Shown here one piece after another: positions 11,717-49,644 of a DNA stretch of 64,000 bases. The number at the start of each line of letters is the position of its first letter. The first letter of the stretch is position 1. A model generated the notes under the pieces. The model did no database searches and was not told the DNA's origin. It saw only the letters and a list, made by a program, of their open reading frames with translations. The stretch spans positions 124,001 to 188,000 of IMG/VR virus record IMGVR_UViG_3300042923_000569. The stretch is one strand, 5' to 3'. Position numbers and translations under genes: made by a program.

Positions 11717-11745
11717 AATATACCATATTTTTTTATTGCGTTTCA
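11717..11745 (-). promoter_or_regulatory. early-type promoter TGAAAC-N17-TATATT
   Basis: One of five copies with identical geometry and an extended TG. Confidence 0.7.
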
Positions 11746-11748
11746 GAT

Positions 11749-12864
11749 TTATGCAAACATCTTTTTGACTTCAGTTAATTGAATTCCTTTAACATAAGTC
11801 CTGATATTTGAAGATTCAAGTTTACCATTTTTAACCATCTCCTGAATGTCACCAACTGGTGCATCAGTAAACCGATCAAATACTTTGATAATTAGGTCTT
11901 CAAGCTCATTATCAATTTCACGACGAATAATAAAGTACTCGGTCAACTTATAAAGAAAATCTTCACCACCATTATTTTTGATATTCATAGTACTAAAAAG
12001 TTCTACCATATCTTCAGGTTTCTTCTTCCTGAATTTAATCAAACTTTCTGAATGCAATTTAACGAAATTGCTGAATTTAACCATCCGTGCAGGTAGTTTA
12101 ATTGAACCTGCTACATAATCTTTATCAGCAGTCATATTAGAAAGAATAACACTCCAGATAAATTCGTCTCGATGTTCAACAGTACTGTTATCTGCAATAG
12201 AATCAATTAGGTCTAATTCTTTTTGTGTTGCAGTAAAACCTGGAAGAAGAATAGCTAACGCACCAACACTTTTTAAGTACTTCAAAAAGATACTTGGCTT
12301 TTCTTCAGAGAATGCTTTTTCAAATTCTACATATACACGCTCTTTAGTAAGATGATTAATCTCACCAGCGGCAACCATCTGACGCACCATTGCATCAGTG
12401 TCTTTGTGTACGCTGAAATCAGCATAACGGGCCGCAAAACGTGCTAGACGAAGCACACGTAGCGGGTCTTCTTTAAACGCGTCAGAGACGTGTTTAAGCA
12501 CCTTATTTTTGAGATCTTCTTTACCATTATATGGGTCAACGTGTGTCTTTGTAATAATATCCCACGCAATGGCATTGATAGTTAGATCTCGACGAAATAG
12601 ATCCTGTTCTAAAGTTACACCCTGAGTTTCAACGGTGAAACCATCATAACCAGTACCAGTTTTTCTTTCAATACGTGCTAGTGCATACTCATCACCATCT
12701 GGTGATAGAAATACAGGGAAGTCTGCACCAACTTGTTTGTATCCAATACTCTCAAGATATGCAATATCTTTTGGTTTTGCACCAACAAGTACGTAATCTT
12801 TGTCTTTTGGTTTAAGACCTAAAAGTTTATCGCGAACAAAGCCGCCTACAATATATTTTTTCAT
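11749..12864 (-). CDS. cca: tRNA nucleotidyltransferase (CCA-adding enzyme, class II)
   Basis: YIVGGFVRD, DKDYV, DLFRRDLTINAIA, EDPLRVLRLARF. Confidence 0.95.
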   Translation of the reverse strand: MKKYIVGGFVRDKLLGLKPKDKDYVLVGAKPKDIAYLESIGYKQVGADFPVFLSPDGDEYALARIERKTGTGYDGFTVETQGVTLEQDLFRRDLTINAIAWDIITKTHVDPYNGKEDLKNKVLKHVSDAFKEDPLRVLRLARFAARYADFSVHKDTDAMVRQMVAAGEINHLTKERVYVEFEKAFSEEKPSIFLKYLKSVGALAILLPGFTATQKELDLIDSIADNSTVEHRDEFIWSVILSNMTADKDYVAGSIKLPARMVKFSNFVKLHSESLIKFRKKKPEDMVELFSTMNIKNNGGEDFLYKLTEYFIIRREIDNELEDLIIKVFDRFTDAPVGDIQEMVKNGKLESSNIRTYVKGIQLTEVKKMFA

Positions 12865-12865
12865 T

Positions 12866-13120
12866 TTACATCCTAGAGTATCGTGATGGGGGTGGTTCAG
12901 GCATTTTAGGTGGTTCAGGTATTGGTGGAAGGTTAATTATATCTTCTTTAATAATTTCTCCCCAAAAGCCCGTAAGTATTTCTGGTGTTTTTTCTGGTCT
13001 ATTTCCGATATCACCTTTTTGTCGGTGGCTCTGATGACGTAGTAATGCTACTTCTTCAGCAAGAGAATCTTCGCCAACCCAAAAACCATAATTCTCATCA
13101 TACAAATTAATCTCTTGCAT
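12866..13120 (-). CDS. hypothetical protein with Pro-rich tail
   Basis: 84 aa; PPIPEPPKMPEPPP; shares FWGEII / FWGNII motif with the upstream ORF. Confidence 0.55.
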   Translation of the reverse strand: MQEINLYDENYGFWVGEDSLAEEVALLRHQSHRQKGDIGNRPEKTPEILTGFWGEIIKEDIINLPPIPEPPKMPEPPPSRYSRM

Positions 13121-13505
13121 TTAATAATTCACCTACTATTATATTACCCCAAAAGTTACTAGATAATGAATCTAAAAGTTCCTTTCTCTCAGCAGCTTCG
13201 GTAATTTGTTTAATACGGTCGGGGTAATCGCCTAGCGATCTATGCCGTGGAAGATTATTTTCAATATAATTTGAGCCGCCACCTTCTTCAAAAAAAGCCA
13301 TATTATATCCACTCTTTTTTAATTTTTGTAATATAAATTCATAAACTTTTAGTGGGTCATCTTGAATATTATTTTCAATGTATGTACGACAAAATCTAGC
13401 ATCATCCATTGTAATAGTATGGGTTCCATGTTCAATGAAAAACATATCATGGGGACTACCATAAAAACATGCTTTCAAACCATAAATTCTAAAAACCGAA
13501 CTCAT
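13107..13505 (-). CDS. hypothetical protein
   Basis: 132-aa ORF downstream of a TTGACA-type promoter. Confidence 0.65.
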   Translation of the reverse strand: MSSVFRIYGLKACFYGSPHDMFFIEHGTHTITMDDARFCRTYIENNIQDDPLKVYEFILQKLKKSGYNMAFFEEGGGSNYIENNLPRHRSLGDYPDRIKQITEAAERKELLDSLSSNFWGNIIVGELLNARD

Positions 13506-13561
13506 ATTTAAATTCCAGTTAAAATATAAAAAAAGGACAGTGCATTTCTGCCCGTCCTTAT

Positions 13562-13590
13562 AATGTATCAGATTTTTACTTAGCTGTCAA
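13562..13590 (-). promoter_or_regulatory. sigma70-like promoter TTGACA-N17-TACATT
   Basis: Canonical -35, 17-nt spacer, TGn extended -10. Confidence 0.65.
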
Positions 13591-13597
13591 GGGTTTA

Positions 13598-14530
13598 TTA
13601 AATGCTACTCAATAACATATCCACTCGGTTTCCACCTACTTGAGTATACCACAGAGAGTTTTTAATTTCCTTCTTGAAACGGTGTGAATTGCTGTTCTGC
13701 ACACTTTTCCACAGTTTATTGAACCTGGATAGTTTGTCACAGCCCATTGTATACGCCATTTCAAATAGGACACGTTGCTGATCTAATGTCAGGTCAACAG
13801 CCTTTTTCCGCTGTAAAAGTAGTACGAAGTCGTTTTTAGTACGCTCCATGTCTTGTAATAGCATATCATGTGCTTGCCTTTTGCTGATACCATTACGATA
13901 TTTTACTGCATCTCTTTCGCTCTTACCCAAGTAATGACCATATCCAATAGTGAAATGACCAGTACTGTCACGATACGGGTAGAACTTTCCATTTTTAAAA
14001 GATGGACCAACTTTACCGCCAAGTAACTTTCTCTTAATTGCTGATTGAGATTCACTTGTTCCTTCTGCTGTTTTGAGATGATCGATCATAGTTTGATCCC
14101 TAATATCTAACTCTTCAGTGATATTTGGAAGTACTATCTCTTTCAAATCAATATCGCTTGGAATGTCAAACATTGTACCCGGATGTAATACTACATCCTT
14201 ATTAACCATTTGAAGTATTTTGACATAATCTTTTACCTCAACATTGTCTGGTTTAATTTTAGTAGCTACGGTCCAGAGACTATCACCACTAAGTACTTTG
14301 TATTGCTTTCTGCTTACAGTTAGTTCAGTTTCACTCTGAACAACTGGCGGTTGCTTTTGAATTTTTATAACGGGTTCTGTTTGTACCACTGCCTCTTCGA
14401 CAGAGACTGATGATGTAGTACGATCATGTGAGTTTAAACCTAATCCAAATGCAGCGGCAAGCAACAGAAAACCTACTAAGATATATTTTAACTTAGCACG
14501 AGTCTTGAGTTCTTGTATCGCTTTATACAA
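13598..14530 (-). CDS. membrane-anchored LysM + lysozyme (GH24-like) peptidoglycan hydrolase; TTG start
   Basis: N-terminal hydrophobic helix; LysM YKVLSGDSLWTVA...LHPG; lysozyme E(G)...PYRDSTGHFTIGYGH. Confidence 0.78.
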   Translation of the reverse strand: MYKAIQELKTRAKLKYILVGFLLLAAAFGLGLNSHDRTTSSVSVEEAVVQTEPVIKIQKQPPVVQSETELTVSRKQYKVLSGDSLWTVATKIKPDNVEVKDYVKILQMVNKDVVLHPGTMFDIPSDIDLKEIVLPNITEELDIRDQTMIDHLKTAEGTSESQSAIKRKLLGGKVGPSFKNGKFYPYRDSTGHFTIGYGHYLGKSERDAVKYRNGISKRQAHDMLLQDMERTKNDFVLLLQRKKAVDLTLDQQRVLFEMAYTMGCDKLSRFNKLWKSVQNSNSHRFKKEIKNSLWYTQVGGNRVDMLLSSI

Positions 14531-14643
14531 AATTTCTCCTTATTACACATTTTGGTGCTTCTTTTGCGTAATAAAGCTTACACTTTATGCGGCGGCTTTA
14601 TTTGCACAAAGTCGCTTTTGGACTTTCTACGTTAGTACGAATA

Positions 14644-15231
14644 CTACTTCGAAATTTTATTTTCTCTACTTCGAATCAACCCTTCAATGTCATACATTTT
14701 AAGTTGTTCAGTAGATGCTGTCAACGATATTGAACCTAAAGTATCTAGGTCACAGCCCTTGATACCGACACTCCTAAATTCTTCAATACTTTGAAGCATA
14801 TGAGGCGGTATCAACTCAGACAGTATAGGCTGATATTTATCATAAGTCAATATAAATTCAATAAATTCAGGCCGAACGATCATAAATCCATCAGAAACAC
14901 ACGTTTTTAAAATAACTCTGACATAATTCACATTTTCTTCAAGATCTGGATTAGCCATCACAGAATTTATTTGAAAGTTTTTAACAGGTGTTATATTATA
15001 TGGACATAGGCGATATTCTTCTATCACTAATCTTTCAACATCCACATAAAATCCAGCCTTAGTACACATACTTTGTGCATTGCAAATATAAGTAAGTGCT
15101 TCTGCATAGCTATAGTATTCAGAACCTAGAGTACTAGAAACCAAATCACCATTTGCCGAAATTACATATATAAACTGTCCGGTTATTCTATCACGAATCT
15201 TGAATTTTTCAATCATAGTAGGTTCTTCCAA
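14644..15231 (-). CDS. hypothetical protein
   Basis: 195-aa ORF. Confidence 0.6.
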   Translation of the reverse strand: MEEPTMIEKFKIRDRITGQFIYVISANGDLVSSTLGSEYYSYAEALTYICNAQSMCTKAGFYVDVERLVIEEYRLCPYNITPVKNFQINSVMANPDLEENVNYVRVILKTCVSDGFMIVRPEFIEFILTYDKYQPILSELIPPHMLQSIEEFRSVGIKGCDLDTLGSISLTASTEQLKMYDIEGLIRSRENKISK

Positions 15232-15634
15232 TAGTTATGTGGAATTCAGGAAATACCGGAAGACCTAATTCACGACGAACTTCTACTAATTCTGGACATT
15301 CAAAGTTTATAATAAAGAAGCTGCCTGGTTTTTTTCTATCTTTTACTTCAATGATATTAGGATAGAATCTGAACGTAAATTTCTTTCTGTGATATTTTTT
15401 CCACAGATGAATGTGTTCTTCATCTGGTTTTTCCCCACGAATAATACTTACGTGAGCACCCCACGCAGGCATATCGAGTATAACATGTTTTTCTTTTTGT
15501 ACGAAGTACTGGTAGTATCTTACCAAATCGTTAGGTAATTGTAATACGCACCAGTACTCAGTTCGTTTCTTCATATCTTTCCGGTCAGGGTCATATTCAA
15601 GATACCCTTCCAGTTCAATATATTCGGTAGTCAC
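15209..15634 (-). CDS. putative 2H phosphoesterase
   Basis: Two Hx(S/T)x motifs, AHVSI and FHITI, with 2H-type spacing. Confidence 0.55.
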   Translation of the reverse strand: MTTEYIELEGYLEYDPDRKDMKKRTEYWCVLQLPNDLVRYYQYFVQKEKHVILDMPAWGAHVSIIRGEKPDEEHIHLWKKYHRKKFTFRFYPNIIEVKDRKKPGSFFIINFECPELVEVRRELGLPVFPEFHITIGRTYYD

Positions 15635-15647
15635 AACTCACCTATTA

Positions 15648-15788
15648 TTATAATCCAAATATTTTAGCTACAGTTATTGCAAAAGCACCAACAATTACGG
15701 TCCCAATAGTAGTTAAAATAGGGTTCACTGCAAAAGATGTTTTATACATCAATACAGCACCAAAAATTTTGTTACGTATATCTTTCAT
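15648..15788 (-). CDS. small membrane protein (46 aa, not in ORF track)
   Basis: Manual translation MKDIRNKIFGAVLMYKTSFAVNPILTTIGTVIVGAFAITVAKIFGL; fills the intergenic gap exactly. Confidence 0.6.
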   Translation of the reverse strand: MKDIRNKIFGAVLMYKTSFAVNPILTTIGTVIVGAFAITVAKIFGL

Positions 15789-15789
15789 T

Positions 15790-15990
15790 TTATTCTTCCC
15801 AATAACTAATAGCTTCTTTTACTGCATCTGCTGGTGAAGTGGATTTCCAATCTAATAGTTCATCATCTACCCAAGGTGAAATTTCACCTTCAACAGTACT
15901 AAACCAATGTTCTGGTGGAGTATTAATTGATTTTAAAAATGTTATAAAATGAAAAGCAAAATGTAGTTTCCATTCTTCAAATGTATTCAT
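15790..15990 (-). CDS. hypothetical protein
   Basis: Start moved to MNTFEEW (AAGGA RBS); the longer ORF start overlaps a terminator. Confidence 0.6.
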   Translation of the reverse strand: MNTFEEWKLHFAFHFITFLKSINTPPEHWFSTVEGEISPWVDDELLDWKSTSPADAVKEAISYWEE

Positions 15991-16044
15991 AATAATTCCT
16001 TTTAAATGAAAAAACCCCACCGAAGTGAGGCTTTTGTGGTTATA

Positions 16045-17559
16045 TTAACCTAGTACTTGATAGCGTGGACTATCAATAGTACGTAACATTACTTGTACTG
16101 GATCTACATCCTCACCACTTAGTACTGCTTCTAATACACTTGGGCTGAATCCACTTACTAGTGCAACACCTGCGGTGTCAAACTTAACTGGATTGTTACC
16201 TGGACGTGCATTTAGATTCCAGAATACTACGGTTGGTAGTTCATATCCTGCACTTTCAAAGTCTGCTTTAGCAACTTCATATGCTGTACCATTCCAACCA
16301 CCATTACGAGCGTTAAACTCCATATCAGTTAGTACAATTAGGTTCTTTGGCATTTCGTCTGCTGGTACTTGTTGCTGAACACATACGCGTAGAATTTCTT
16401 TAAAAGCCAATTCAATGTTTGTGCTACCAGACCAGTACTGATTGCCCTGATAACGCTCAAGATCAAACTTCTTCTCAGCAATATTCGAACCTTTAAGTTC
16501 AAAGATTTGTGGACGAGTACTGAAGTTTAAGAATAGATCTTTGAAAGCACCTTCTTGTTTATCAGCAATGTACAAACCTAATGAAATAGCAACATCCATA
16601 CATGTCATACTGGTTGAACCAGCAGAAGTACCCATAGAGCCAGAGGTATCTACCATTGGGATTGATTTAGAATCACCCATGAAGTTACGTAAAGCTTCCC
16701 ATTGTGCCACAGCTAGTGCAGTACTTTCGGTGTTATAACGATTAAGCTTAGTGGTAATATCATATGGATACAATGCACCAGCATTTACCTTAGCTTCACC
16801 TTTTGCAAGAGATGCTAGATATTCACGATAACGACCTTCATCATGTTTCATGAATGCTGGTAGGTAACGTGAACTAGCAACTGATGGTAGTTTACCATAA
16901 TCAATTTCAGACCATTCACTTGCACACATTTTCTGTTCAACGGTGTTGCTCATTGAAGATAGTAGTTTGCGGTACTGACGTTCATTGATATTCATCACAG
17001 CCATTAAATCTCGTGCAATTTTGTTGTTACTTGCACGGTTTTGGTTTGCTACGGTATTCATGTCAACTTTGCCTTGTGCGTTCTTTTTGAACTTATAGAC
17101 GCGAGGCATCCATTTAGCACATAGACCATTACCGGACTTTAGTGCTTCCGCAATAGTCTGGTACGCAAGAGTTTTGGACTCTGGATTTTTAAAGATTAAC
17201 AGATCGTCCCAACGACCGAATTCTGCAAGTACAGGGATAATACGTAAAACTTCTTCTGGATGTTTAGACTCAACATACTTTAGTAATTCGCGTGGGGTAT
17301 TACGTTCACCAGCACCACCGCGAATATCCCTAGCCCAAAGGATCATCTGCAATGCTAATGTTGAATTAGCTGCATATGCCGCGTCAAAAGATGCTTTGTA
17401 CGCGTTGATGTTTTTGTTACGTAGAGAACCAATCATAAAGAACAGATCTACTAACGGATTTAGGGTACTTTTTAAGGATTCCCCACCATTCGCGGTGCGA
17501 GAGCGGTTATCAGATACTGTGGTGTTTAAATTGTTTACTGCGTTTTTAAATGCTGACAT
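16045..17559 (-). CDS. DUF2828-type vWA-domain protein (Ro60/TROVE-like architecture)
   Basis: WARDIRGGAGER, GRWDDLL, AKWMPR; MIDAS DTSGSM; LTDMEF; VFWNL; LVSGFS. Confidence 0.82.
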   Translation of the reverse strand: MSAFKNAVNNLNTTVSDNRSRTANGGESLKSTLNPLVDLFFMIGSLRNKNINAYKASFDAAYAANSTLALQMILWARDIRGGAGERNTPRELLKYVESKHPEEVLRIIPVLAEFGRWDDLLIFKNPESKTLAYQTIAEALKSGNGLCAKWMPRVYKFKKNAQGKVDMNTVANQNRASNNKIARDLMAVMNINERQYRKLLSSMSNTVEQKMCASEWSEIDYGKLPSVASSRYLPAFMKHDEGRYREYLASLAKGEAKVNAGALYPYDITTKLNRYNTESTALAVAQWEALRNFMGDSKSIPMVDTSGSMGTSAGSTSMTCMDVAISLGLYIADKQEGAFKDLFLNFSTRPQIFELKGSNIAEKKFDLERYQGNQYWSGSTNIELAFKEILRVCVQQQVPADEMPKNLIVLTDMEFNARNGGWNGTAYEVAKADFESAGYELPTVVFWNLNARPGNNPVKFDTAGVALVSGFSPSVLEAVLSGEDVDPVQVMLRTIDSPRYQVLG

Positions 17560-17651
17560 TATATCTTCCTTTCAGAAATGGTTTAATTATGTTGTTGACA
17601 CACTTCTCTTAAAACTTATTGATTGTGCATACATTGCTTATCAATAAGACT

Positions 17652-17680
17652 ATTATACCACAATTTTAAATCTTGTTTCA
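17652..17680 (-). promoter_or_regulatory. early-type promoter TGAAAC-N17-TATAAT
   Basis: aaaaaTGAAACaagatttaaaattgTGgTATAAT, upstream of the vWA gene. Confidence 0.78.
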
Positions 17681-17722
17681 TTTTTCTCAATTAAAAACAG
17701 CACCTTGCAGTGCTGTATAATA

Positions 17723-18988
17723 TTAATCTTCCGACTTTAGTAGATACTTGTTGTTAATAACTTTAAAGTGAACAGTACTGCCATTTACTTTTACAGTGCT
17801 TTTATATACATCACCTTCTGCGATAGGGTGAGTAATACTCGCATGATCAGCAGATGCTAGTGCTTCTTTAATAGATTCAAATTCTTTAAAGAAATAAACA
17901 ATATCACCTTGTGGAACCGTAGTAACACCTAGTGCAGCAGTAATTTCTAGGAAATCTGCATCATCTAAGAAGTTTTGATTATCGATATCCCAAATACGGA
18001 AACAATAGAACTGATGTTCTTCTAGCTGTTCGCGGTTACCCTGAATACCCGGTCCCATACATTCACCTTGCAAAGCAAGCTGGCGATCATACTTTTCGCA
18101 GTACTCTTTGAGACGTGCTGGAATATCATCTTTTAGTGCAGCTTTCCAGAATGCAGTACTTTCATCGAACTTCAATGCAAGATTGCGTGAGCAAACTACT
18201 ACTTGAGATTCCTGCCATTGGAACGGATAAGGTTTAACTTCAAGTACTTTAAGTTCTTGTAGTTCTTCATCCCACTCAACGACTTCATCATCAACTTTCT
18301 CAACAAAGAAATCTGGATTATTAAAGTACGCGATAGTCTGGCTAGAACCATCTAGTTTTAGAGACTTACGGAATGGAACATCCTGCATAGTCTGGCTAAA
18401 TTTACCAAATACGTTCTGAATACGATCTTCATCAGTTTTTGGAACTACTAGTGGGAAGTTGCCAGCAACTTTAGCTTTACCGGCACCAGTACCACCATTA
18501 CGTTCATCTGGACGTTCGTACTTAGTAACGTTTAAGTACTGCTCAATACCATGACGATTTTCTTCAAGATCACGAAGAATATCTTTTGCATTACCCATAA
18601 TAGTTTCAGCACTTGGCTGAAAGCAATACCTTACATTAGAATTAATACGATAGAAGAAATCTGCAAATGCAATTACTGGAAGTGCAAGTCCCTGGGAAAG
18701 TTGTTTCCTGAGCTTGATTGATTTCAACCGAATACGTTCAACACCATGTTCATCAGTTTTAGTTCCATTCTTAGAAAGGAAAGAAAAACGAGGATCATTT
18801 GCCGGAAGGAATGAATCAATCTCAAAGAATACACAGTAATCGCCGGGTGCAAATTCACCCTTTTTGATTACTACCTGCCAACCATCAATAGTTGCAACTT
18901 CAATTGCATCTGCACCATCAATAGGATTAACTTCTAGTACTTTGCGAATAGTTACTAGTTTGCGGCCTTCAGTTACTAACTCTGTCAT
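17723..18988 (-). CDS. RNA ligase, DRB0094/Rnl2-like family
   Basis: RKLVTIRKV, KLRKQLSQGL, KTDEDRIQN, KLDGSS (motif I), QGECMGPGIQGN, EGDVYK, FKVINNKYLL; start placed at MTELV. Confidence 0.9.
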   Translation of the reverse strand: MTELVTEGRKLVTIRKVLEVNPIDGADAIEVATIDGWQVVIKKGEFAPGDYCVFFEIDSFLPANDPRFSFLSKNGTKTDEHGVERIRLKSIKLRKQLSQGLALPVIAFADFFYRINSNVRYCFQPSAETIMGNAKDILRDLEENRHGIEQYLNVTKYERPDERNGGTGAGKAKVAGNFPLVVPKTDEDRIQNVFGKFSQTMQDVPFRKSLKLDGSSQTIAYFNNPDFFVEKVDDEVVEWDEELQELKVLEVKPYPFQWQESQVVVCSRNLALKFDESTAFWKAALKDDIPARLKEYCEKYDRQLALQGECMGPGIQGNREQLEEHQFYCFRIWDIDNQNFLDDADFLEITAALGVTTVPQGDIVYFFKEFESIKEALASADHASITHPIAEGDVYKSTVKVNGSTVHFKVINNKYLLKSED

Positions 18989-19005
18989 TATTTTTCTCTT
19001 TTTAA

Positions 19006-19335
19006 TTATTTTGTAGGAACTCGACGGTTCCACTTTTGCATTACTTCTTCCATTGAATCACCAATCAAAGACGCACCACAACCAAATTCACTTTCAAGAC
19101 AATTAAATGTCCAGTACATTCCACGTTCGGTAATATCTTTTTCTGAAACAAGTTGTAATGGAGAATGATGTGAATGCTTAATATCTAAATCTTCCCCAAA
19201 GCAATGAATATCCAATGGCGGGCATTTATACCAATGCATTCCCGTTGGATGTAAACTATCATGCAAGTTGTAGTGTCCAGGTTGGTTTCCACAAAACGGA
19301 CACGGCTTTATTTCACCTTTATAATGATGTTCCAT
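19006..19335 (-). CDS. Lar-like (restriction alleviation) zinc-ribbon protein
   Basis: IKPCPFCG...CGAS...EEVMQKWNRR. Confidence 0.5.
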   Translation of the reverse strand: MEHHYKGEIKPCPFCGNQPGHYNLHDSLHPTGMHWYKCPPLDIHCFGEDLDIKHSHHSPLQLVSEKDITERGMYWTFNCLESEFGCGASLIGDSMEEVMQKWNRRVPTK

Positions 19336-24192: not shown

Positions 24193-24558
24193 TTAGCAGT
24201 AGAAAACAAACTTAGGATTGTAGTAATTGCACAAATTTTTGACAGTATGATAATCAATTACTCCATAGATAAAGAGAAAATCGCATGGCAATGATGCCGA
24301 ATACAAAGTCTTTTTATCAATGAAGTTTAAATTATCTTGGTGTTCTACTTCAATATGCTTGTCAAAATTAACACAAATAACTGAAAAATCATCTAAAGAA
24401 ATCTCTTTCATGGCACTTAAAATACCAGATGCTTTGTCATCATTATGTCGTACTAATCGAATGATATTCTGTCGAAAGACATATAGATTCATCTCAATTA
24501 AAATTAGAAAATACTTACTCATTACATCAGAGAAGTACTTGTTATCGGATAGGTTCAT
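24193..24558 (-). CDS. hypothetical protein
   Basis: 121-aa ORF. Confidence 0.55.
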   Translation of the reverse strand: MNLSDNKYFSDVMSKYFLILIEMNLYVFRQNIIRLVRHNDDKASGILSAMKEISLDDFSVICVNFDKHIEVEHQDNLNFIDKKTLYSASLPCDFLFIYGVIDYHTVKNLCNYYNPKFVFYC

Positions 24559-24701
24559 TGCCTAACTCCGTTAGTCAAGAATTTCGTTGTTCTGTACTCG
24601 TTATCACTCGTACTGAATCAACTCAATTCAATTTATTACGTTTAACACTTTATATTGACGGGGTTTGTTGATCCAATTGCATCCCCCCGCAAGGGAGAAC
24701 G

Positions 24702-24727
24702 AAAAAAAAAGCCAGAATAAATCTGAC
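24702..24727 (-). terminator. intrinsic terminator closing the ncRNA candidate
   Basis: GUCAGA-UUUAU-UCUGGC-U9. Confidence 0.75.
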
Positions 24728-25200
24728 GGTGGTAGTCTTACCTCTGAATTTGTAGATTTTACTCAAATTTTGGACGCAACTTTACTGTCCAATTTAAGTA
24801 GTAAACACTGGCGGGTTGTCCGGTTTCCAGTTACTACAGTCGCATACAACGGTCGGGGTCTTAATCATCATCCCGCATCAGTACTCGCTAATTCAGCAAC
24901 AAGCACTGTGATATTCTAATAGAATATCTCCCTTTCAACAGGGTTGAGTATGCACTCAATATGTCTATCAAGGGCGTTTATGTTTTCTTACACGCCTTTA
25001 TTGTGCCGCATTGCCGTGATTCGTAGACTTAAGTCGCTTTGTATGACTGCTAGTACTCTAACGGGTTTCATTTGCACATCGTACTGATTGAACTACTCAT
25101 CTGCCATCTACTTGTCGATAGGATCAGGGTTTAACTATTCCTTGTTAAAGGATCAATCAGAGTTATATAAAACAAAAGGGAAGGTCAACTAAGACCTTCC
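24702..25200 (-). ncRNA. candidate large structured non-coding RNA (~460-500 nt), family unassigned
   Basis: ORF-free gap (24559-25236) with higher GC than flanks; promoter at 25206-25234; at least eight hand-found helices; 3' terminator GUCAGA-UUUAU-UCUGGC-U9 at 24702-24727. Confidence 0.7.
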
Positions 25201-25205
25201 CCTAT

Positions 25206-25234
25206 ATTATACCACAATTTTTAAAGTTGTTTCA
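25206..25234 (-). promoter_or_regulatory. early-type promoter TGAAAC-N17-TATAAT
   Basis: aaaaTGAAACaactttaaaaattgTGgTATAAT, upstream of the ncRNA candidate. Confidence 0.78.
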
Positions 25235-25236
25235 TT

Positions 25237-25500
25237 TTATTCATCTTTATAAAAAGAATCATTGTAGCGTTGGGTTTGAACCAGATATTTGGGATCGATA
25301 TTATCTAGATTGATATTATCATTTAAGAATTTGATAGCTTTTTCTTCTGTACTAAAGTACAAACGTTCTTCAGTACCTTTTGCACAAAGAAAACGACTAT
25401 GGTCATAGTCCATTTCGTCATGATCTTGCATACAAACAACTGTCAAAATATTATCGTCTTCACCAATACGAATAATACGATAATATACATCATTCCACAT
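25237..25500 (-). CDS. hypothetical protein
   Basis: 87-aa ORF. Confidence 0.6.
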   Translation of the reverse strand: MWNDVYYRIIRIGEDDNILTVVCMQDHDEMDYDHSRFLCAKGTEERLYFSTEEKAIKFLNDNINLDNIDPKYLVQTQRYNDSFYKDE

Positions 25501-29142: not shown

Positions 29143-30384
29143 TTATTTCCCATACCATTGCATTTCACGAAGTTCAATTAGTAGCTTAGCTGCTTTATGA
29201 ATATCTGGTGCACGTGGTAAATCAGTTTGTTTATATAGTACTTCTCGGATATAGATATCTTTTTCTGTCCAGTAAGCCATCATCTCATCAAATGACCATG
29301 AACCATTTCTGATCGCTAATAGTTCAGCAGCATCAGGACGTTTAACATGAACTTCACCGGTAGTTAATGCTTCTTCGGCAGTTCGTAGTAAACGTACAAC
29401 ATGCATTGCATGTTTTGTATCATAACCGTTGAGTTGCTCTAATTCAGAACGAGCCTCATTACGGTTTTCTTTCCAGCTATGATAGTTATGACGGTTATCA
29501 GAACTCTTCTCGTATTCTTCTTTGTTGAATTTTACAATAAGTTTTGGCTGTTCTTTCACTTCTTCTAATGTCATAACAGAGGTGTCAATACGATTGATAC
29601 TACCATCATAATTGATAGTTTTAGCACCTTCTTTTGGAACTAGACCAAAGATGTTATCACCATATGGAACAAGCTGATAATCATCCCTGTAATTAAGAAT
29701 GTTGAAATCACGATCTAGTACTTGATGTTCGAAATAGTTATGTACCAATTTAACAAAATGATATTGTTTAAGTGGTAAAGTACTGATCATTTGTAATGAA
29801 GCATTACGCATGAATTTTTCGAAATCAATAATAGTTTTTATGTACTGACCTTTCGCCGCTTCAACATTAACAAGATTCATAATGTATGAAGGGAATGAAT
29901 CACCAATCCATTGAACCATTTGCTCACATGGATATTGGTCAATTAGTTCCTGAAGAATACGAACTCCAGTACGTTCTTTATCCATCCAGCCGTGATGATT
30001 TTTCATACGTTTAGCTTGGTTATGAGCATAACCAGTGTATGTAAATGCAATTTTTGAGGATAGAAGGTCGGAACGTGCTGCACGAAGATGATCATACATT
30101 TCAGTTTTGAAAGTAATATCACCTTCATCAACCCATAGTGATTCAAGAATATTTGGGTTAGCAGTAAGATAGAGTTGCATGTAGTTATTCAACTCATAGT
30201 ACTTTGTATCTTCTTCTTTGACGTCACTTACTTCATTAACTTTGAAGAAAGGAGTAATGATGAATTCTTTATCAGCAACAAAGATTCCGCGAAAGTCGGT
30301 ATCAGATGTTGGAGTACTAGTTCCGTAAGCCTGGCTACCTGCCAAGTGTCGGACAATTAAATTGTCTAAATGATTATTTTTCAA
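29143..30384 (-). CDS. pol-beta superfamily nucleotidyltransferase (RNA-repair-associated RlaP-like family)
   Basis: GSQAYGTSTPTSDTDFRG, NPNILESLW, YDTKHAMHVVRLL. Confidence 0.85.
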   Translation of the reverse strand: MKNNHLDNLIVRHLAGSQAYGTSTPTSDTDFRGIFVADKEFIITPFFKVNEVSDVKEEDTKYYELNNYMQLYLTANPNILESLWVDEGDITFKTEMYDHLRAARSDLLSSKIAFTYTGYAHNQAKRMKNHHGWMDKERTGVRILQELIDQYPCEQMVQWIGDSFPSYIMNLVNVEAAKGQYIKTIIDFEKFMRNASLQMISTLPLKQYHFVKLVHNYFEHQVLDRDFNILNYRDDYQLVPYGDNIFGLVPKEGAKTINYDGSINRIDTSVMTLEEVKEQPKLIVKFNKEEYEKSSDNRHNYHSWKENRNEARSELEQLNGYDTKHAMHVVRLLRTAEEALTTGEVHVKRPDAAELLAIRNGSWSFDEMMAYWTEKDIYIREVLYKQTDLPRAPDIHKAAKLLIELREMQWYGK

Positions 30385-30403
30385 GTTATCCCTTTATTAT
30401 TTT

Positions 30404-30970
30404 TTACGTATAATACTTCGCTAGAAGAGTCTCCTTACGATTTAATATACGTTGTTTTTCTTCATGTACTCTTTGCATTTCTAACAGCTTTTCTTCTGCG
30501 TCTTTTGCTTCACGCAGGGAAAGATATACTCCTTTAAACCATTCGTGGTCGGCACCTTCAAATAAAACAATATCATCAACTATTGTTACATCTCTAGTAA
30601 GGATGAAATAGATCCCATGAATTTTATCGAAAATAACTTCAGGATCTACTTCTTTTGAGTTTGCCCCGTACTTTTGCGAGTCAGGTAAGCATTCCATGAT
30701 TACTTTATCATTAATTACCAAACTTACATCGTCCGAACCCTTTTTAAATTTACGGGTTGCTTCTATGATTTCAAAGCGATGTAATTCAGTAGCAATAGTT
30801 TTGACCAACATAAATTGAGAATGCTTTAAAGATGAAAGCTTTCTCTTAACATCAATTATCTGTTTCCTTCTGCGTGTCTTTACGTCAGGAGTTTTTATAT
30901 CGTTAACAAACTCTTTAAGCATTTTGCTGTTTTTACGTAAGAGTAAAAACATCATAGTATTTTCATTCAT
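30404..30970 (-). CDS. hypothetical protein, paralog family B
   Basis: LLRKNSKML...IIDVKRKLS...HRFE. Confidence 0.65.
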   Translation of the reverse strand: MNENTMMFLLLRKNSKMLKEFVNDIKTPDVKTRRRKQIIDVKRKLSSLKHSQFMLVKTIATELHRFEIIEATRKFKKGSDDVSLVINDKVIMECLPDSQKYGANSKEVDPEVIFDKIHGIYFILTRDVTIVDDIVLFEGADHEWFKGVYLSLREAKDAEEKLLEMQRVHEEKQRILNRKETLLAKYYT

Positions 30971-31422
30971 TAACGATACTCCGTTAAAATATCAAGACGT
31001 TCTTGTTCTTTTGTATGTTTGATCATTGTTTCCTCAAGGTGTTTTTTAGCCCTGATTAGGCAATGAAATGCTACAGCAAAGCCCTTATGGTTGGTATCAT
31101 TAAACACAGTAATAGAGTCAACATCAATCGAATTTTGTTTGATTGTAAATGTTGTACCAGTTTTAGTATCAATCAATTTAGGTTCGAGCGTTCCTGTACC
31201 GAGTAATACTTTACTCAGTACTTCATCTGAACCATATACTGTTTCAAAGCGATCAATATCAGTTGCCATGATACGCATAAGATTACGCAAACTACTGTCG
31301 AGTTTAGAGTACTCGTACTTAATATTAATTAAGAATTTACGATCATTATTAGTAGTAATGCCATCCTTTAGTACCGTGCGACTTTTACGAAGCAAAGCAA
31401 ACAGCATATCTGACTTGTTCAT
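30970..31422 (-). CDS. hypothetical protein, paralog family B
   Basis: LLRKSRTVL...LINIKYEYSKL...DRFE. Confidence 0.65.
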   Translation of the reverse strand: MNKSDMLFALLRKSRTVLKDGITTNNDRKFLINIKYEYSKLDSSLRNLMRIMATDIDRFETVYGSDEVLSKVLLGTGTLEPKLIDTKTGTTFTIKQNSIDVDSITVFNDTNHKGFAVAFHCLIRAKKHLEETMIKHTKEQERLDILTEYR

Positions 31423-31427
31423 TATTA

Positions 31428-31730
31428 TTAGCCTTTTATCATTTCAACTATTTCGTTGAACACTTCAATAATCACATTTCCATGACATGGAAGAGGTGTA
31501 CACGAGCACCCAATTCTTTTACCGGAAAGACTTAAAATATCATTTATTGTAATTCTACCATCTTCGATACATTCATACAAATGTTCGCGGTACATTTCAA
31601 TAGAAACAAGTCGAGAAATCCCCTGTCCTAAATCAATAGGATGAGGATTTCCCCAAATAGTACCACGACCGATATAAATGTCAAATTCACCTTTATGTCT
31701 ATTGACAAGTACTGGTGTGATATATTCCAT
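31428..31730 (-). CDS. DUF4326-like protein
   Basis: DIYIGRGTIWGNP...LSGKRIGCSCTPLPCHGNVI. Confidence 0.85.
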   Translation of the reverse strand: MEYITPVLVNRHKGEFDIYIGRGTIWGNPHPIDLGQGISRLVSIEMYREHLYECIEDGRITINDILSLSGKRIGCSCTPLPCHGNVIIEVFNEIVEMIKG

Positions 31731-32233
31731 CAGTTATATGCTGCCTCTACTTTCGATTTCATTACTTGATTTTCACGTTCACGCTCGAACTTTTGAATAT
31801 TATTTTTAATGTACATAATTCCTTTCACTGCCATTATGAACATCTTATAATCTACTAATAGTTTAGAAATATTAGTACCGTCACTTAGCTCAATATTGTG
31901 ATTAGAATCATAGCTATGAGACTCAAATTTGTAATTAGTACTTTTATCATGTACTTTATAATAAAGATAGTCTTCACCAAGCATATCATCTATCCATACA
32001 TCAAATGTTTCCATTTGCTTATACATCTTGATAATAATAGTTCTTACCAGATTACTACAACGACTTAATGCATACTTAATATCGATTATATCTTTTCTTG
32101 CAGCATCTTTGCCTTGTGGATGTTCATTTATATAACTATTAAGGGAAGCAATGCTTCCCTTCATCAAAAATGCTATAATATAATCTGATTCTGTTGGTCT
32201 ATAATGTCGTTTTAGAATCATCAGTATCTCCAA
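31730..32233 (-). CDS. hypothetical protein, paralog family B
   Basis: LMKGS...IIDIKYALSRC...ETFD. Confidence 0.6.
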   Translation of the reverse strand: MEILMILKRHYRPTESDYIIAFLMKGSIASLNSYINEHPQGKDAARKDIIDIKYALSRCSNLVRTIIIKMYKQMETFDVWIDDMLGEDYLYYKVHDKSTNYKFESHSYDSNHNIELSDGTNISKLLVDYKMFIMAVKGIMYIKNNIQKFERERENQVMKSKVEAAYN

Positions 32234-32978
32234 AAATTAACTGTACTTTTTCTTCAGTACTCAAATCTGAAAACTTACGATCTGGAATAACTTCGTCAAT
32301 CTTAGAACGGGTAACTTCATTTCCTTCGTGTTCTTTAATATAAGTTACACGTTGGAAGAAAGTACCTTCTTTGAATAATTTAGGATATTCATTCCAGTTG
32401 ATACCCTTCTCAATTAGAAGCATATCTAATTTTTCATTAGTACTTTTACCCTGCAATGAACTGTGGCTGAAGTTCGCATATGCAGCCATCGAAATACTAT
32501 TACGCACTGCATCCTGATTACGCCATACGAAACAGTTCACAGCTTCAATTTTAGAAGGAACCTGGAACATTCGGCAATCAAATACAGGAAGACTTTTTGA
32601 ACATTCTTCGGGATATGCTTTAAGTGCAAGTTCAATAAACTTTGCAGTTGCAAGAGCAGACAGTACTGAAACCATCTTTTGTTTCTTACCACTGAAGAAA
32701 ACATCACTTTCCATACTTTTCTGCAAATACACAAGACTGATTTCATCAGACTGAGTATACCCAATACATGCACCAGTTTCTTTTACAAGATACTTAGTTA
32801 CTTCCTGCATGATGATGGACATATCCATATCAAAAGGTTTCTTCATTGTACGTGTAAAATTACTGAAAGAACGCCCATCAATACGAGCGTAGATTGGCAG
32901 TAACGGCATGAATTTATCTGAAGTTTCAGCCTTTTCATAAAGCTTAATACGATCACCAAGTTGCATGAATTTTTCCAA
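32199..32978 (-). CDS. thg1: tRNA-His guanylyltransferase (Thg1-like)
   Basis: RIDGRSFSNFT, YTQSDEISL, FDCR, WRNQDAVRNSI. Confidence 0.92.
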   Translation of the reverse strand: MEKFMQLGDRIKLYEKAETSDKFMPLLPIYARIDGRSFSNFTRTMKKPFDMDMSIIMQEVTKYLVKETGACIGYTQSDEISLVYLQKSMESDVFFSGKKQKMVSVLSALATAKFIELALKAYPEECSKSLPVFDCRMFQVPSKIEAVNCFVWRNQDAVRNSISMAAYANFSHSSLQGKSTNEKLDMLLIEKGINWNEYPKLFKEGTFFQRVTYIKEHEGNEVTRSKIDEVIPDRKFSDLSTEEKVQLIFGDTDDSKTTL

Positions 32979-46938: not shown

Positions 46939-46949
46939 ATTATTAAACC

Positions 46950-47234: not shown

Positions 47235-47238
47235 TATA

Positions 47239-47850: not shown

Positions 47851-47852
47851 TT

Positions 47853-48173: not shown

Positions 48174-48174
48174 A

Positions 48175-48993: not shown

Positions 48994-49020
48994 TTTGTAC
49001 CAATAAAAGAAAAGGAAGCA

Positions 49021-49569: not shown

Positions 49570-49644
49570 ATGTTCCTCCTTATTATGTTAATATCATAAT
49601 CGGAAAGTCATACGCCCCTTTATTAGTTTAATCATTTTATTTCC

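What the first reader, a model, noticed from the sequence alone, without database searches (positions are those of the whole stretch)
24702..25200. Large, ornate, unassigned non-coding RNA candidate in a jumbo phage
Seen in sequence: this is the only long gene-free gap (24559-25236) in a densely packed genome, and it is richer in GC than its flanks. It has a phage early-type promoter (25206-25234) and a clean terminator (24702-24727, U9). Minus-strand helices found by hand: CUGAUUGA(25153-60)/UCAAUCAG(25084-91), which closes a multibranch domain containing UUUAAC/GUUAAA and CUAUC/GAUGG; GGCGU/ACGCC (24973-96); UUGAGU-GCAU-ACUCAA (24944-59); CCCU-GUUGAA-AGGG (24930-43); GAUAUUCUA/UAGAAUAUC arms (24910-28); CGGG/CCCG; GUAGUAA-CUGG...CCAG-UG-UUUACUAC (24798-837); UUGGAC/GUCCAA (24770-92). 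A further GGGG/CCCC hairpin pair follows at ~24660-24695. Established: large ornate phage RNAs (GOLLD, ROOL) exist and their function is largely unknown. I could not match tmRNA, RNase P or group I intron core motifs. Inference: an abundant structured RNA, possibly a new class, perhaps a scaffold or a decoy for host RNA-targeting defence, in a phage rich in RNA-repair genes.
Basis: partly seen in the sequence, partly recalled or inferred. Interest (0 to 1): 0.88.

Follow-up and report, generated by a model that had tools for sequence, protein, structure and literature searches.

The report
New multi-copy pseudoknotted phage RNA
The gene-free gap encodes a real, roughly 500-nucleotide, intricately folded non-coding RNA that matches no catalogued RNA family, is present in about five copies in every genome of one clade of giant enterobacterial phages (and rarely in a prophage and an E. 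coli island), and whose job is still unknown.

Summary
Window 24559-25236 (minus strand) has no conserved ORF. It carries the phage's generic early promoter and an RNA of about 500 nt ending at a hairpin plus U9 terminator.

The RNA is real. On 45 and 54 non-redundant homologues, 95-96% of cells are paired, against 36-44% in slid controls. 31 of 54 and 30 of 35 pairs show compensatory changes. Three pseudoknots are supported.

No Rfam family matches, and ARAGORN finds no tRNA or tmRNA.

New here:
- It is a paralogous family of 8 groups, with 5 evenly spaced copies in each of several roughly 355-kb genomes and 3-5 matching places in the other phage records.
- Each copy is a self-contained cassette of about 750 nt: promoter, core, terminator in most groups, then a conserved 3' hairpin and tail.
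- Single copies sit in a Citrobacter prophage and in an E. coli defence island.

One hand-drawn helix is replaced by a long-range pairing.

The function is unproven. My best guess is a discrete, early, trans-acting folded RNA that binds a conserved partner in phage-host conflict. The rivals are an origin primer RNA and a cis-acting antiterminator or leader.

The parts
25206..25234 (-). Early sigma-70-type promoter: TGAAAC (25229-25234), 12-nt spacer, extended -10 TGTGGTATAAT (25206-25216)
   Evidence: Promoter scan. The same motif occurs 5 times on the gene strand of the window. It is conserved in all copies.
25177..25202 (-). 5' hairpin H0, GGGGAAGGUC / GACCUUCCCU, followed by a U-rich tract. 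It is optional: present in some paralogue groups only.
   Evidence: It covaries among group-1 orthologues. It is absent in several paralogue groups (2, 3 and 5 among them).
25081..25160 (-). Domain 1. P1 (25153-25160 / 25084-25091) closes hairpins P1a (25148-25152 / 25139-25143) and P1b (25117-25127 / 25101-25108). It includes the near-invariant junction AGAUGAGUAG and the 3-bp pseudoknot PKx (25094-25096 / 25081-25083).
   Evidence: P1 is 93.5% paired, with 4 pairs changed on both sides. PKx is 100% paired (UA 29, AU 10, CG 6).
25002..25078 (-). P2 (25074-25078 / 25002-25006) and P2a (25061-25064 / 25014-25017). They flank a conserved internal loop (AAAUGAAA / CAAUGCG) and a swappable insert, P2b.
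   Evidence: P2 100% and P2a 99.4% paired, with compensatory changes. Short and long forms of P2b are seen.
24973..24996 (-). Hairpin P3, GGCGU / ACGCC
   Evidence: 97.3% paired, all 5 pairs changed on both sides.
24959..24969 (-). Near-invariant single-stranded junction GAUAGACAUAU
   Evidence: Invariant or near-invariant columns.
24910..24958 (-). Hairpins P4 (24945-24958), P5 (24928-24943, holding the invariant AAGGGAG at 24928-24934) and P6 (24910-24928)
   Evidence: P5 and P6 as drawn are specific to group 1. AAGGGA is invariant and the last G nearly so (at least 90%) across 45 sequences.
24881..24906 (-). Hairpin P7. Its loop CUGAAUU (24890-24896) pairs with 24744-24750 to form pseudoknot PK-A.
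   Evidence: P7 is 86.6% paired with 8 of 9 pairs compensatory. PK-A is 98.9% paired with 6 of 7 pairs compensatory.
24846..24875 (-). Hairpin P8 (24854-24875), then the invariant GACCGU followed by UGY. GUUGU (24846-24850) pairs with ACAAC (24815-24819) to form pseudoknot PK-B.
   Evidence: P8 is 91% paired. PK-B is paired in 270 of 270 cells (CG 31 / UA 23; GC 50 / AU 4; UA 53 / CG 1).
24807..24838 (-). 5' strand of P9 (24834-24838), and hairpin P10 (24827-24831 / 24807-24811) with the conserved 15-nt loop AAACCGGACAACCCG
   Evidence: P9 100% and P10 99.6% paired, with compensatory changes.
24770..24792 (-). Movable peripheral hairpin Pm, UUGGAC...GUCCAA
   Evidence: The same module lies in a different position in groups 5-8. 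The bacterial copies have it at both positions.
24744..24755 (-). Contiguous 3' strands of P9 (CUACA, 24751-24755) and PK-A (AAUUCAG, 24744-24750)
24702..24737 (-). Conserved GACUAYCA...CGUCAG element (24725-24737), overlapping the intrinsic terminator GUCAGA-UUUAU-UCUGGC-U9 (24702-24727)
   Evidence: Non-homologous terminator hairpins sit at the same position in groups 1-4 and 8 and in the bacterial copies. Groups 5-7 have none.
24655..24701 (-). Conserved 3' module. Hairpin P12, CGUUCUCCC-UUGC-GGGGGGAUG (24680-24701), and the tail CAAUUGGAUCAACAAACCCCGUCAA (24655-24679).
   Evidence: The module is present in every copy examined. The 5' strand varies only between C and U opposite an invariant G run. 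Single-nucleotide indels rule out a peptide. It shows no covariation with the core.
24559..24654 (-). Structured stretch up to the next gene. It holds a long imperfect hairpin (about 24579-24629) and the hairpin CUAAC-GGA-GUUAG (24562-24574), which lies just before the ATG at 24556-24558.
   Evidence: The last hairpin covaries (CAAUC/GAUUG, CUUAC/GUAAG, GCUCAC/GUGAGU) and is kept in the E. coli and Citrobacter copies, where no gene follows directly.

Best explanation
Shown:
- This is a self-contained gene cassette for a large non-coding RNA.
- The phage's ordinary early promoter lies directly upstream of the RNA.
- The core is about 430 nt, from P1 at 25160 to about 24725. It comprises some twelve helices locked by three pseudoknots (PKx, PK-A, PK-B), with several invariant single-stranded junctions.
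- In this copy a hairpin plus U9 follows the core. This gives a product of about 500 nt.
- A conserved 3' hairpin and tail follow the terminator.

Inferred:
- Host sigma-70 RNA polymerase starts transcription at about 25198-25201.
- Transcription mostly ends at the hairpin plus U9, and some polymerases read through into the 3' module and the downstream genes.
- The terminated RNA acts in trans as a compact folded particle.
- Its invariant junctions form one binding or catalytic pocket, shared by all paralogues, for a partner common to Enterobacteriaceae or to the phages themselves.
- Five early-expressed copies supply dosage.
- The job lies in phage-host or phage-phage conflict, as a decoy, sponge or scaffold.

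My sub-probabilities:
- real structured RNA family: 0.97
- discrete trans-acting product: about 0.55
- conflict-related binder or decoy: about 0.3
For: Structure:
- On 45 non-redundant elements, 95.9% of cells are paired against 36-43% when partners are slid. There are 437 doubly changed cells against 15-71, and 0 of 500 shuffles reach this.
- On 54 sequences of the 3' domain, 95.3% are paired against 38-44%.
- RNAalifold independently recovers P7, P8, P9 and P10, with 25 of 29 pairs compensatory.
- The fold z-score is -5.0.

Gene-like anatomy:
- The generic early promoter is present.
- Terminators of unrelated sequence are kept at the same spot in 5 of 8 paralogue groups and in the bacterial copies. 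This points to selection for a 3' end right after the core.
- There is no conserved ORF.

Independence from neighbouring genes:
- Genes downstream of the paralogues are unrelated.
- The whole cassette occurs alone between the integrase and the CI repressor of a Citrobacter prophage.
- It also occurs in a 1.4-kb unannotated gap of an E. coli island that carries the candidate defence system PDC-M45.

Strong constraint:
- In several phages only the RNA aligns at the DNA level, not the flanking genes.
Against: - There are no expression data, so neither abundance nor the 3' end is shown.
- Three paralogue groups lack a terminator, so there the RNA is co-transcribed with genes.
- Conservation continues past the terminator to the start of the next gene. 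A purely terminated RNA does not explain this.
- Each paralogue keeps its syntenic place across genera, and the five copies are evenly spaced (P about 0.001-0.005). This would fit a locus-bound, cis role better.
- No partner protein is encoded next to the RNA in any context.
- No match to a conserved E. coli gene was found, whether as antisense target or as host-RNA mimic.
Confidence: 0.5

Rival explanations
1. The RNA is the pre-primer of a replication origin, working like ColE1 RNA II or the origin transcripts of phage T4. An early-promoter transcript folds, reaches the conserved G-run hairpin and tail, stays hybridised to the DNA, and its 3' end primes leading-strand synthesis in the direction of transcription. 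The downstream hairpins would serve lagging-strand priming.
For: - Five copies lie at about 32, 94, 174, 258 and 336 kb of 378 kb in CBB, and at matching positions in Serratia BF and pEa_SNUABM_47. A smallest gap this large has P 0.001-0.005.
- All copies have the same orientation as the genes.
- The cassette needs no protein gene and moves as a unit into a prophage and an island. This is what a Rep-independent origin would look like.
- The size (about 500-550 nt from a sigma-70 promoter) resembles RNA II (my own knowledge).
- There is an invariant G6 run next to a C run.
- The E. coli island has a tandem 13-mer and a 23-nt inverted repeat with GATC sites 400 nt downstream.
Against: - An intrinsic terminator lies between the core and the supposed origin in most groups.
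- Three pseudoknots and invariant junctions are far more than a primer is known to need.
- No antisense RNA I-like promoter is present.
- There is no inflection of cumulative GC skew at the locus.
- The syntenic genomes count as one observation of spacing. Loss of closely spaced repeats by recombination could also produce it.
- A temperate prophage already has its own origin.
Confidence: 0.17
2. The RNA is a cis-acting leader. The nascent RNA modifies the transcribing polymerase (processive antitermination, as with HK022 put RNA), or shields a long untranslated leader from Rho and RNases. Polymerases that start at this promoter would then read through the terminator and the hairpin-rich leader into the downstream genes.
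For: - The RNA sits directly after an early promoter. It is followed by a terminator and then genes on the same strand.
- Conservation and structure continue to the start codon (z -4.5 and -5.3 for the leaders of two paralogues).
- Each paralogue keeps its syntenic position across genera.
- In group 1 the 5' arm of the terminator overlaps the conserved GUC of P11.
Against: - Known RNA antiterminators are 70-120 nt, not 450 nt.
- The downstream genes have nothing in common.
- Other early promoters of the same phage drive genes through short leaders without this RNA.
- In the E. coli island the cassette is followed by 600 nt of non-coding DNA, not by a gene.
- In groups 2-4 and 8 the terminator does not overlap the core.
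Confidence: 0.13
3. The RNA is a ribozyme. The pseudoknotted core with invariant junctions would be a catalytic centre. It might process its own transcript at the twice-repeated YCGUCAG (end of the core and end of the tail), or act on another RNA.
For: - The size, the multiple pseudoknots and the invariant unpaired nucleotides are typical of large ribozymes.
- CGUCAG is repeated at both module ends.
- The groups without a terminator need some way to make a 3' end.
- The phage encodes an RNA ligase, Thg1, a CCA-adding enzyme and a cyclic-phosphate-processing domain.
Against: - No known ribozyme family matches.
- No covariation links the cleavage-site candidates to the core.
- Nothing here shows chemistry.
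Confidence: 0.08
4. The RNA binds a small molecule. It would be either a giant riboswitch controlling the terminator or a high-copy RNA sponge for a metabolite or an immune second messenger.
For: - The RNA has a compact pseudoknotted fold with invariant junctions.
- A terminator lies immediately 3' and overlaps the core in group 1.
- Expression is early and multi-copy.
- Neighbouring genes counter NAD depletion.
Against: - No riboswitch family matches.
- There is no common regulated gene.
- The terminator is separate from the core in most groups.
- The aptamer would be more than twice the size of any known one.
Confidence: 0.05
5. It is a diverged member of a known family that the models missed (group I or II intron, RNase P RNA, tmRNA, Y RNA), or it is not RNA at all (small proteins, or a DNA-only site).
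For: - Rfam models can miss divergent introns.
- Annotators have called small ORFs here in several GenBank records.
- A putative RNA-binding protein (DUF2828/DUF7788, named 'RNA-binding protein' in PHROG 850) is encoded 7 kb away.
Against: - cmscan finds nothing above noise, even at E up to 10 on the 1-kb region.
- ARAGORN finds nothing.
- The element has its own promoter, and the flanking genes are complete and differ between phages.
- The annotated small ORFs differ in strand and place, and the longest ORF here is broken in 9 of 10 orthologues.
- Compensatory changes and G-U tolerance on one strand show an RNA-level constraint.
Confidence: 0.02

Closest known systems
GOLLD, ROOL and OLE (large 'ornate' bacterial and phage RNAs)
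   Same: The RNA is several hundred nucleotides long with many helices, pseudoknots and conserved junctions. It is phage-associated and its biochemical function is unknown. It was found by conservation rather than by phenotype.
   Different: There is no sequence or structure match (Rfam). The hosts and phage clade differ: Enterobacteriaceae and RaK2/121Q-like myoviruses. It is multi-copy, with about five diverged paralogues per genome. It forms a fixed cassette with a promoter, a terminator and a conserved 3' module. Oligomerisation is untested.
ColE1 RNA II and T4 origin transcripts (RNA primers of replication)
   Same: It is a transcript of about 500-550 nt from a sigma-70-type promoter whose folding matters. 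The unit is protein-independent and portable. A G-rich element lies near the 3' end. T4-type phages have several dispersed origins.
   Different: A terminator precedes the putative origin, and there is no antisense RNA I. The tertiary structure is far more elaborate and conserved. No replication evidence exists.
HK022 put RNAs (cis-acting RNA antiterminators)
   Same: There are several copies per genome. Each lies just downstream of an early promoter and upstream of terminators and genes.
   Different: put is about 70 nt with two stem-loops, whereas this core is about 430 nt with three pseudoknots. This cassette also occurs where no gene follows it.
Group I introns of T4-type phages
   Same: It is a phage RNA of similar size with several copies per genome, pseudoknots and conserved junction sequences.
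   Different: It is not inserted in a gene and has its own promoter. It does not match RF00028. The order of the helix strands differs: here PK-A and P9 are nested and the knots come from hairpin loops.
Bacterial and phage Y RNAs (YrlA) with Ro60
   Same: The phage encodes a candidate RNA-binding protein (DUF2828/DUF7788) and RNA-repair enzymes on the same strand.
   Different: Y RNAs are 80-130 nt (PMC4201824) and lie within 4 kb of the Ro60 gene. This RNA is four times longer and 7 kb away. Four of its five copies are elsewhere, and there is no YrlA match.

Membership tests
Group I intron | Match to the family covariance model (RF00028) | tested here: not met
   There is no hit at the gathering score in the whole window. 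There is none at E up to 10 in 24400-25400 with permissive filters.
Group I intron | Interrupts a gene whose exons join to restore a reading frame | tested here: not met
   The upstream ORF ends with its own stop at 25237, a promoter follows, and the downstream ORF has its own ATG. The flanking genes differ between phages.
Group II intron | Domain V/VI hairpins and a match to RF00029 or the D1-D4 models | tested here: not met
   Searches give no hit. No 34-nt domain V-like hairpin is conserved in alignment A2.
tmRNA | tRNA-like domain plus a tag reading frame | tested here: not met
   ARAGORN finds no tRNA or tmRNA in the window. There are no Rfam tmRNA hits.
RNase P RNA | Conserved regions CR-I to CR-V and a match to the RNase P models | tested here: not met
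   Searches give no hit.
GOLLD / ROOL / OLE / raiA / HEARO | Match to the respective Rfam covariance model | tested here: not met
   Searches give no hit. The best 'hit' anywhere in the region is a microRNA model at 21.8 bits against a gathering score of 86, over the 5' hairpin.
Y RNA (YrlA) | 80-130 nt long, within 4 kb of a Ro60/TROVE gene on the same strand, and a match to the YrlA model | tested here: not met
   There is no Rfam hit. The RNA is about 500 nt and lies 7 kb from the DUF2828 gene. The other four copies are in other neighbourhoods.
ColE1-type primer RNA (RNA II) | An antisense RNA I promoter within the first ~110 nt, and uninterrupted transcription to the origin | tested here: not met
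   No plus-strand promoter-like site lies inside 24644-25205. A terminator lies before the conserved 3' module.
ColE1-type primer RNA (RNA II) | A persistent RNA-DNA hybrid and RNase H cleavage that give a DNA-synthesis primer | not testable with these tools
   This needs replication assays. Only the even spacing of the copies speaks to it.
put-type RNA antiterminator | Lies between an early promoter and downstream terminators, in several copies per genome | tested here: met
put-type RNA antiterminator | A two-stem-loop RNA of about 70 nt that makes the polymerase terminator-resistant in cis | tested here: not met
   The size and fold differ. The activity itself is not testable here.
Riboswitch | An aptamer whose 3' part competes with an expression platform, upstream of a coherent set of genes | tested here: not met
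   The terminator overlaps the core in group 1 only. The downstream genes are unrelated. No riboswitch model matches.
Intrinsic (Rho-independent) terminator, for 24702-24727 | A G+C-containing hairpin followed directly by a U run on the transcribed strand | tested here: met
   One search finds a 6-bp stem, a 5-nt loop and U9. Analogous hairpins with U6-U8 occur in groups 2-4 and 8.

The most novel reading that the evidence does not exclude
This would be a previously undescribed class of large, triply pseudoknotted RNA. It spreads as a protein-independent cassette among giant virulent phages, a prophage and a defence island. It would do something not yet known for RNA in phage biology. One possibility is an RNA-only effector of phage-host conflict, acting as a sponge, decoy or ribozyme on a conserved enterobacterial target. 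Another is a new kind of structured RNA-primed replication origin placed at regular intervals along a 350-kb genome.
Probability: 0.35. Interest if true: 0.92.

Novelty: categorically new. Interest (0 to 1): 0.86.

Why it matters
Large RNAs with conserved tertiary structure are rare. Nearly all those whose function is known do fundamental work, such as ribosomes, RNase P, self-splicing introns, tmRNA and guide RNAs.

- **Constraint.** This one is under strong constraint, with invariant junctions across paralogues that are only about 55% identical.
- **Investment.** Every genome examined in this phage clade (72 GenBank records plus metagenomic genomes) carries several copies, five where all were located. 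Related phages of this clade, such as 121Q, PBECO4, GAP32 and CBB, grow on ordinary laboratory hosts.
- **Mobility.** It has moved into bacterial mobile elements.

This gives a tractable system for finding a new RNA function by deletion, trans-complementation, pull-down and cryo-EM. It also supplies an alignment with enough covariation to build a covariance model.

It corrects annotation as well. Several GenBank records call spurious small ORFs across these loci.

Tried and rejected
- **Rfam and ARAGORN.** I ran Rfam at the gathering score on the whole window and at E up to 10 on the locus. Only noise came back. ARAGORN found nothing.
- **A second copy in the window.** Pattern search and an nhmmer profile find only the one at 24646-25216.
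- **The ncRNAs reported for phage PA5oct (PMC7318152).** I fetched the region holding ncRNA001 and ncRNA002. They share no motifs with this RNA, and nhmmer gives no hit.
- **A 10-aa peptide starting at the AUG of GGGGGGAUG.** I rejected it because single-nucleotide indels are frequent there.
- **A sigma-70 or late promoter, or a sigma-dependent pause site, in the tail.** I rejected it because the -35-like and -10-like hexamers are less conserved than the spacer and are absent in some copies.
- **Pairing of the 3' module with the core.** I tried GCGG/CCGU and GAUGAG/CUCGUC. There is no two-sided covariation.
- **Pairing of the GACUAUCA loop with GAUAG.** It is not maintained in group 1.
- **Resemblances I noticed by eye while reading the sequence (not tool results).** These were a TPP-riboswitch-like ACCUGAUC, a sarcin-ricin-like AGUACGA, the 16S 3' end UUGGAUCA, and a group II domain V-like CCGU..UAUGCGA. 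Each is a short match confined to one paralogue group or unsupported by the models.
- **A conserved partner gene next to the RNA.** None was found.
- **One collection scan was too unspecific.** CGACCGTTG..AACCCGC returned mostly chance hits. I used none of its new loci for the alignments, although an nhmmer search later found true copies in four of the loci numbered L067-L176 (L087, L112, L145, L147).
- **Plasmids.** No match.
- **Literature.** Eight full-text searches and five papers found no description of this RNA.
Full report
**What is at the locus**

On the minus strand, an 87-aa ORF ends at 25237 and a 121-aa ORF starts at 24558. Between them lie 678 nt without a gene-strand ORF. This is the longest such gap in the window, apart from one that holds a plus-strand gene.

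- The 84-aa plus-strand ORF inside the gap is interrupted by stops or frameshifts in 9 of 10 orthologues.
- GC content rises to 0.39-0.42, against 0.28-0.35 around it.
- The scan finds the promoter (25206-25235), a hairpin just after it (25176-25203) and the hairpin plus U9 terminator at 24711-24727.
- The promoter is not special to this locus. TGAAAC-N12-TnTGnTATAAT occurs five times on the gene strand of the window. The site at 17652, the one I read, precedes a protein gene with a short leader. I therefore read it as the phage's generic early, host-polymerase promoter.
- The minus strand folds 5 standard deviations better than shuffles. The plus strand folds 2.8 better.

**Is it known?**

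cmscan against Rfam 15 gives no hit at gathering scores in the 64-kb window. At E up to 10 in the 1-kb region it gives only noise. ARAGORN finds no tRNA or tmRNA. Eight full-text literature searches and five papers found no description. The papers included the PA5oct transcriptome and a 2026 review of jumbo phages. The library is incomplete, so this is absence of evidence.

**Relatives**

The window is 100% identical to a metagenomic viral contig of 357,873 bp (L029). blastn finds the locus in 62-72 GenBank phage records. All are RaK2/121Q-like jumbo myoviruses of Enterobacteriaceae and allies: Asteriusvirus, Mimasvirus, Eneladusvirus, Salmonella 7t3/Munch-like phages, Klebsiella phages and others. 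Identity is 70-88%.

In several of them only the RNA aligns and the flanking genes do not. The gap is unannotated, or carries small ORFs that differ in strand and place.

**A multi-copy family**

Exact-pattern scans of IMG/VR showed several copies per genome. I distinguish eight paralogue groups. The window's phage has five copies: L012, L027, L029 (the window copy), L057 and L264. Only one lies in the window. CBB, GAP32, Yen9-04 and Serratia BF also have five each. 121Q-like phages have three or four.

Every copy examined has the same anatomy:
1. the early promoter;
2. an optional 5' hairpin;
3. a core of about 430 nt;
4. the element GACUAYCA..CGUCAG;
5. a terminator hairpin plus U run in groups 1-4 and 8, with unrelated hairpin sequences, and none in groups 5-7;
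6. a U/C-rich linker;
7. a 9-10-bp hairpin, UUCAUUCCCC-UGY-GGGGGGAUGAA;
8. a tail, AUUGnnUCAACAAAYCYCGUCAR;
9. further hairpins.

**Structure**

On 45 non-redundant full elements (A2), eleven well-aligned helices are 95.9% paired, against 36-43% when the 3' partners are slid. 31 of 54 pairs are changed on both sides. There are 437 doubly changed cells against 15-71 in the slid controls, and no shuffle of 500 reaches this. On 54 sequences of the 3' domain (A3), the figures are 95.3% against 38-44%, with 30 of 35 pairs. RNAalifold on its own recovers P7, P8, P9 and P10.

Three pseudoknots are supported:
- **PKx.** Three base pairs bracket the 3' strand of P1. It is 100% paired (UA 29, AU 10, CG 6).
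- **PK-A.** The loop of hairpin P7 pairs with AAUUCAG 140 nt downstream. It is 98.9% paired, with 6 of 7 pairs compensatory.
- **PK-B.** GUUGY, after the invariant GACC, pairs with RCAAC in the 15-nt loop of P10. It is paired in 270 of 270 cells, including GUUAC/GUAAC and GUCAU/AUGAC variants.

Two do not. UUUAAC/GUUAAA is replaced by the hairpin UCCUU/AAGGA. GUAGUAA/UUUACUAC is replaced by the long-range P9, UGUAG/CUACA.

Between the helices lie invariant or nearly invariant strings: AGAUGAGUAG, GAAACCCGU, CGGCAAUGCGGC, GAUAGACAUAU, AAGGGAG, GACCGUUG and AACCCGC.

Peripheral modules move. One hairpin sits in different places in different groups. The P2b insert has a short and a long form that swap within a group.

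**The 3' module**

The 5' strand of hairpin P12 varies only between C and U, opposite an invariant G run. I take this as an RNA-level constraint on the transcribed strand, so at least some transcripts must pass the terminator. The AUG inside it does not start a conserved peptide, because 1-nt indels are common. I found no covariation between this module and the core. The last hairpin before the next gene, CUAAC-GGA-GUUAG, covaries. It is kept even where no gene follows.

**Context**

All neighbours are on the same strand. The immediate ones are proteins of unknown function.

The window holds many RNA and tRNA enzymes: RNA ligase, a CCA-adding enzyme, Thg1, an RlaP nucleotidyltransferase, Nudt16-cREC, TyrRS, PIN-PhoH and a DUF2828/DUF7788 'RNA-binding protein'. 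It also holds NAD-salvage genes.

The genes downstream of other paralogues are unrelated to each other. No partner gene travels with the RNA.

**Outside the jumbo phages**

A scan of one genome per bacterial species hit a Citrobacter amalonaticus contig.
- There, only the cassette matches the phages.
- It lies between a large serine recombinase and a CI-type repressor, next to chromosomal hofB-ppdD. This is the end of a prophage.
- Three metagenomic contigs carry this variant of the cassette. Two of them are long enough to show the recombinase gene beside it.

Two of 5,426 complete E. coli genomes carry one copy.
- It lies in a 1.4-kb unannotated gap of a 10-kb island beside ffs.
- The island has an IS3-split integrase and the candidate defence system PDC-M45, made of DuOB, DUF488 and mSLOG-DUF4326.
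- These copies keep the promoter, all core motifs, a terminator, the 3' module and the final hairpin.

No plasmid has the cassette. So the cassette is a portable, protein-independent unit.

**Spacing**

In CBB the five copies lie at 32.3, 94.2, 174.4, 258.1 and 336.3 kb of 378.4 kb. Serratia BF and pEa_SNUABM_47 match this. Five random points have a smallest gap this large with P 0.001-0.005. The genomes are syntenic, so this is one observation made after the fact. Loss of closely spaced repeats by recombination could also produce it.

**How it most likely works**

Shown: a real, novel, highly structured RNA gene family with an early promoter and, in most copies, a terminator at the end of the core.

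Inferred: a discrete RNA of about 500 nt, made from the first minutes of infection, that acts in trans through a pocket formed by the invariant junctions. Read-through forms would carry the 3' module.

I favour this reading for three reasons:
- Unrelated terminators are maintained at the same point.
- The downstream genes share nothing.
- The cassette stands alone in a prophage accessory region and in a defence island, where conflict genes gather.

I hold the functional part loosely, at about 0.3.

The main rival is an RNA-primed origin. Even spacing, co-orientation and a portable protein-free unit with a G run argue for it. The terminator before the module and the elaborate fold argue against it. 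Next comes a cis-acting antiterminator or leader. A ribozyme or a ligand binder are compatible sub-cases. Nothing found here distinguishes them decisively. The experiments listed would.

**Verdict**

The interpretation as a new, large, ornate RNA is supported. The proposed decoy or scaffold role is untested. I rate it as categorically new among catalogued RNA families and of high interest.

Noticed in passing
window 11749-19033, 29143-32978, 45673-59361 (minus strand): The window holds a dense set of RNA, tRNA and NAD-related genes.
- CCA-adding enzyme (11749-12864)
- DUF2828/DUF7788 'RNA-binding protein' (16045-17559)
- RNA ligase (17723-19033)
- RlaP nucleotidyltransferase (29143-30384)
- Thg1 (32199-32978)
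- TyrRS (45673-46938)
- PIN-PhoH (51728-53155)
- Nudt16-cREC (53524-54417)
- SIR2, NAMPT and NMNAT-Nudix
I did not test whether the DUF2828 protein is Ro60-like. It has no sequence match in the PDB.
   Followed up: partly
window 11717-11745, 17652-17680, 25206-25234, 50838-50866, 59415-59443 (minus strand): There is a recurrent early-promoter motif, TGAAAC-N12-TnTGnTATAAT. The copy at 17652 is preceded by a terminator hairpin and AATTGAGAAAAA. This recalls the 'promoter-early stem-loop' cassettes of T4-type phages (my own recollection; I did not check it).
   Followed up: partly
L180:1845-6024 (Citrobacter amalonaticus P55, NZ_JBALIF010000001.1): A prophage is inserted beside hofB-ppdD. Its order is: large serine recombinase, the RNA cassette, a 165-aa ORF, a CI/S24 repressor, then a Ner/SfsB-like regulator. 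The metagenomic contigs L193 and L242 show the same recombinase-cassette arrangement; the short contig L185 carries the same cassette variant.
   Followed up: partly
L265:4997-15341 (E. coli LR-29-1, NZ_AP027515.1) and L266 (E. coli EEC_W5): An island of about 10 kb lies next to ffs. It has an integrase split by IS3, the RNA cassette, and the candidate defence system PDC-M45 (DuOB, DUF488, mSLOG-DUF4326). About 600 nt of further non-coding DNA follows the cassette. That stretch includes a tandem 13-mer, ATTATCGATCGTT x2, and a 23-nt inverted repeat (10010-10061).
   Followed up: partly
CBB 32.3/94.2/174.4/258.1/336.3 kb; Serratia BF and pEa_SNUABM_47 likewise: The five paralogues are spread almost evenly along the genome, with gaps of 62-84 kb, and all have the same orientation. 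This is unexplained.
   Followed up: partly
L009:748-1383 (Xanthomonas phage XaC1) and L006:1-616 (Salmonella phage 7t3): HNH endonuclease genes lie next to, or a few genes from, the group-1 RNA locus in two phages. They replace the usual upstream neighbours. They are probably free-standing homing endonucleases.
   Followed up: no
GenBank records LT960551 (g159, g160), PQ464595, MK773491, PQ464590 at the orthologous loci: Small ORFs of 30-65 aa are annotated across the RNA, on varying strands and in varying frames. They are most likely spurious calls.
   Followed up: partly
window 50690-51047: This is the second-longest gap on the gene strand (358 nt). It contains another copy of the early promoter (50838-50866). 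I did not examine it for structure.
   Followed up: no
L254:764-999 and 14452-14902 (Pseudomonas phage PA5oct): The two highly expressed 'lncRNAs' reported for this distant relative share no motif with the family described here. nhmmer gives no hit.
   Followed up: yes
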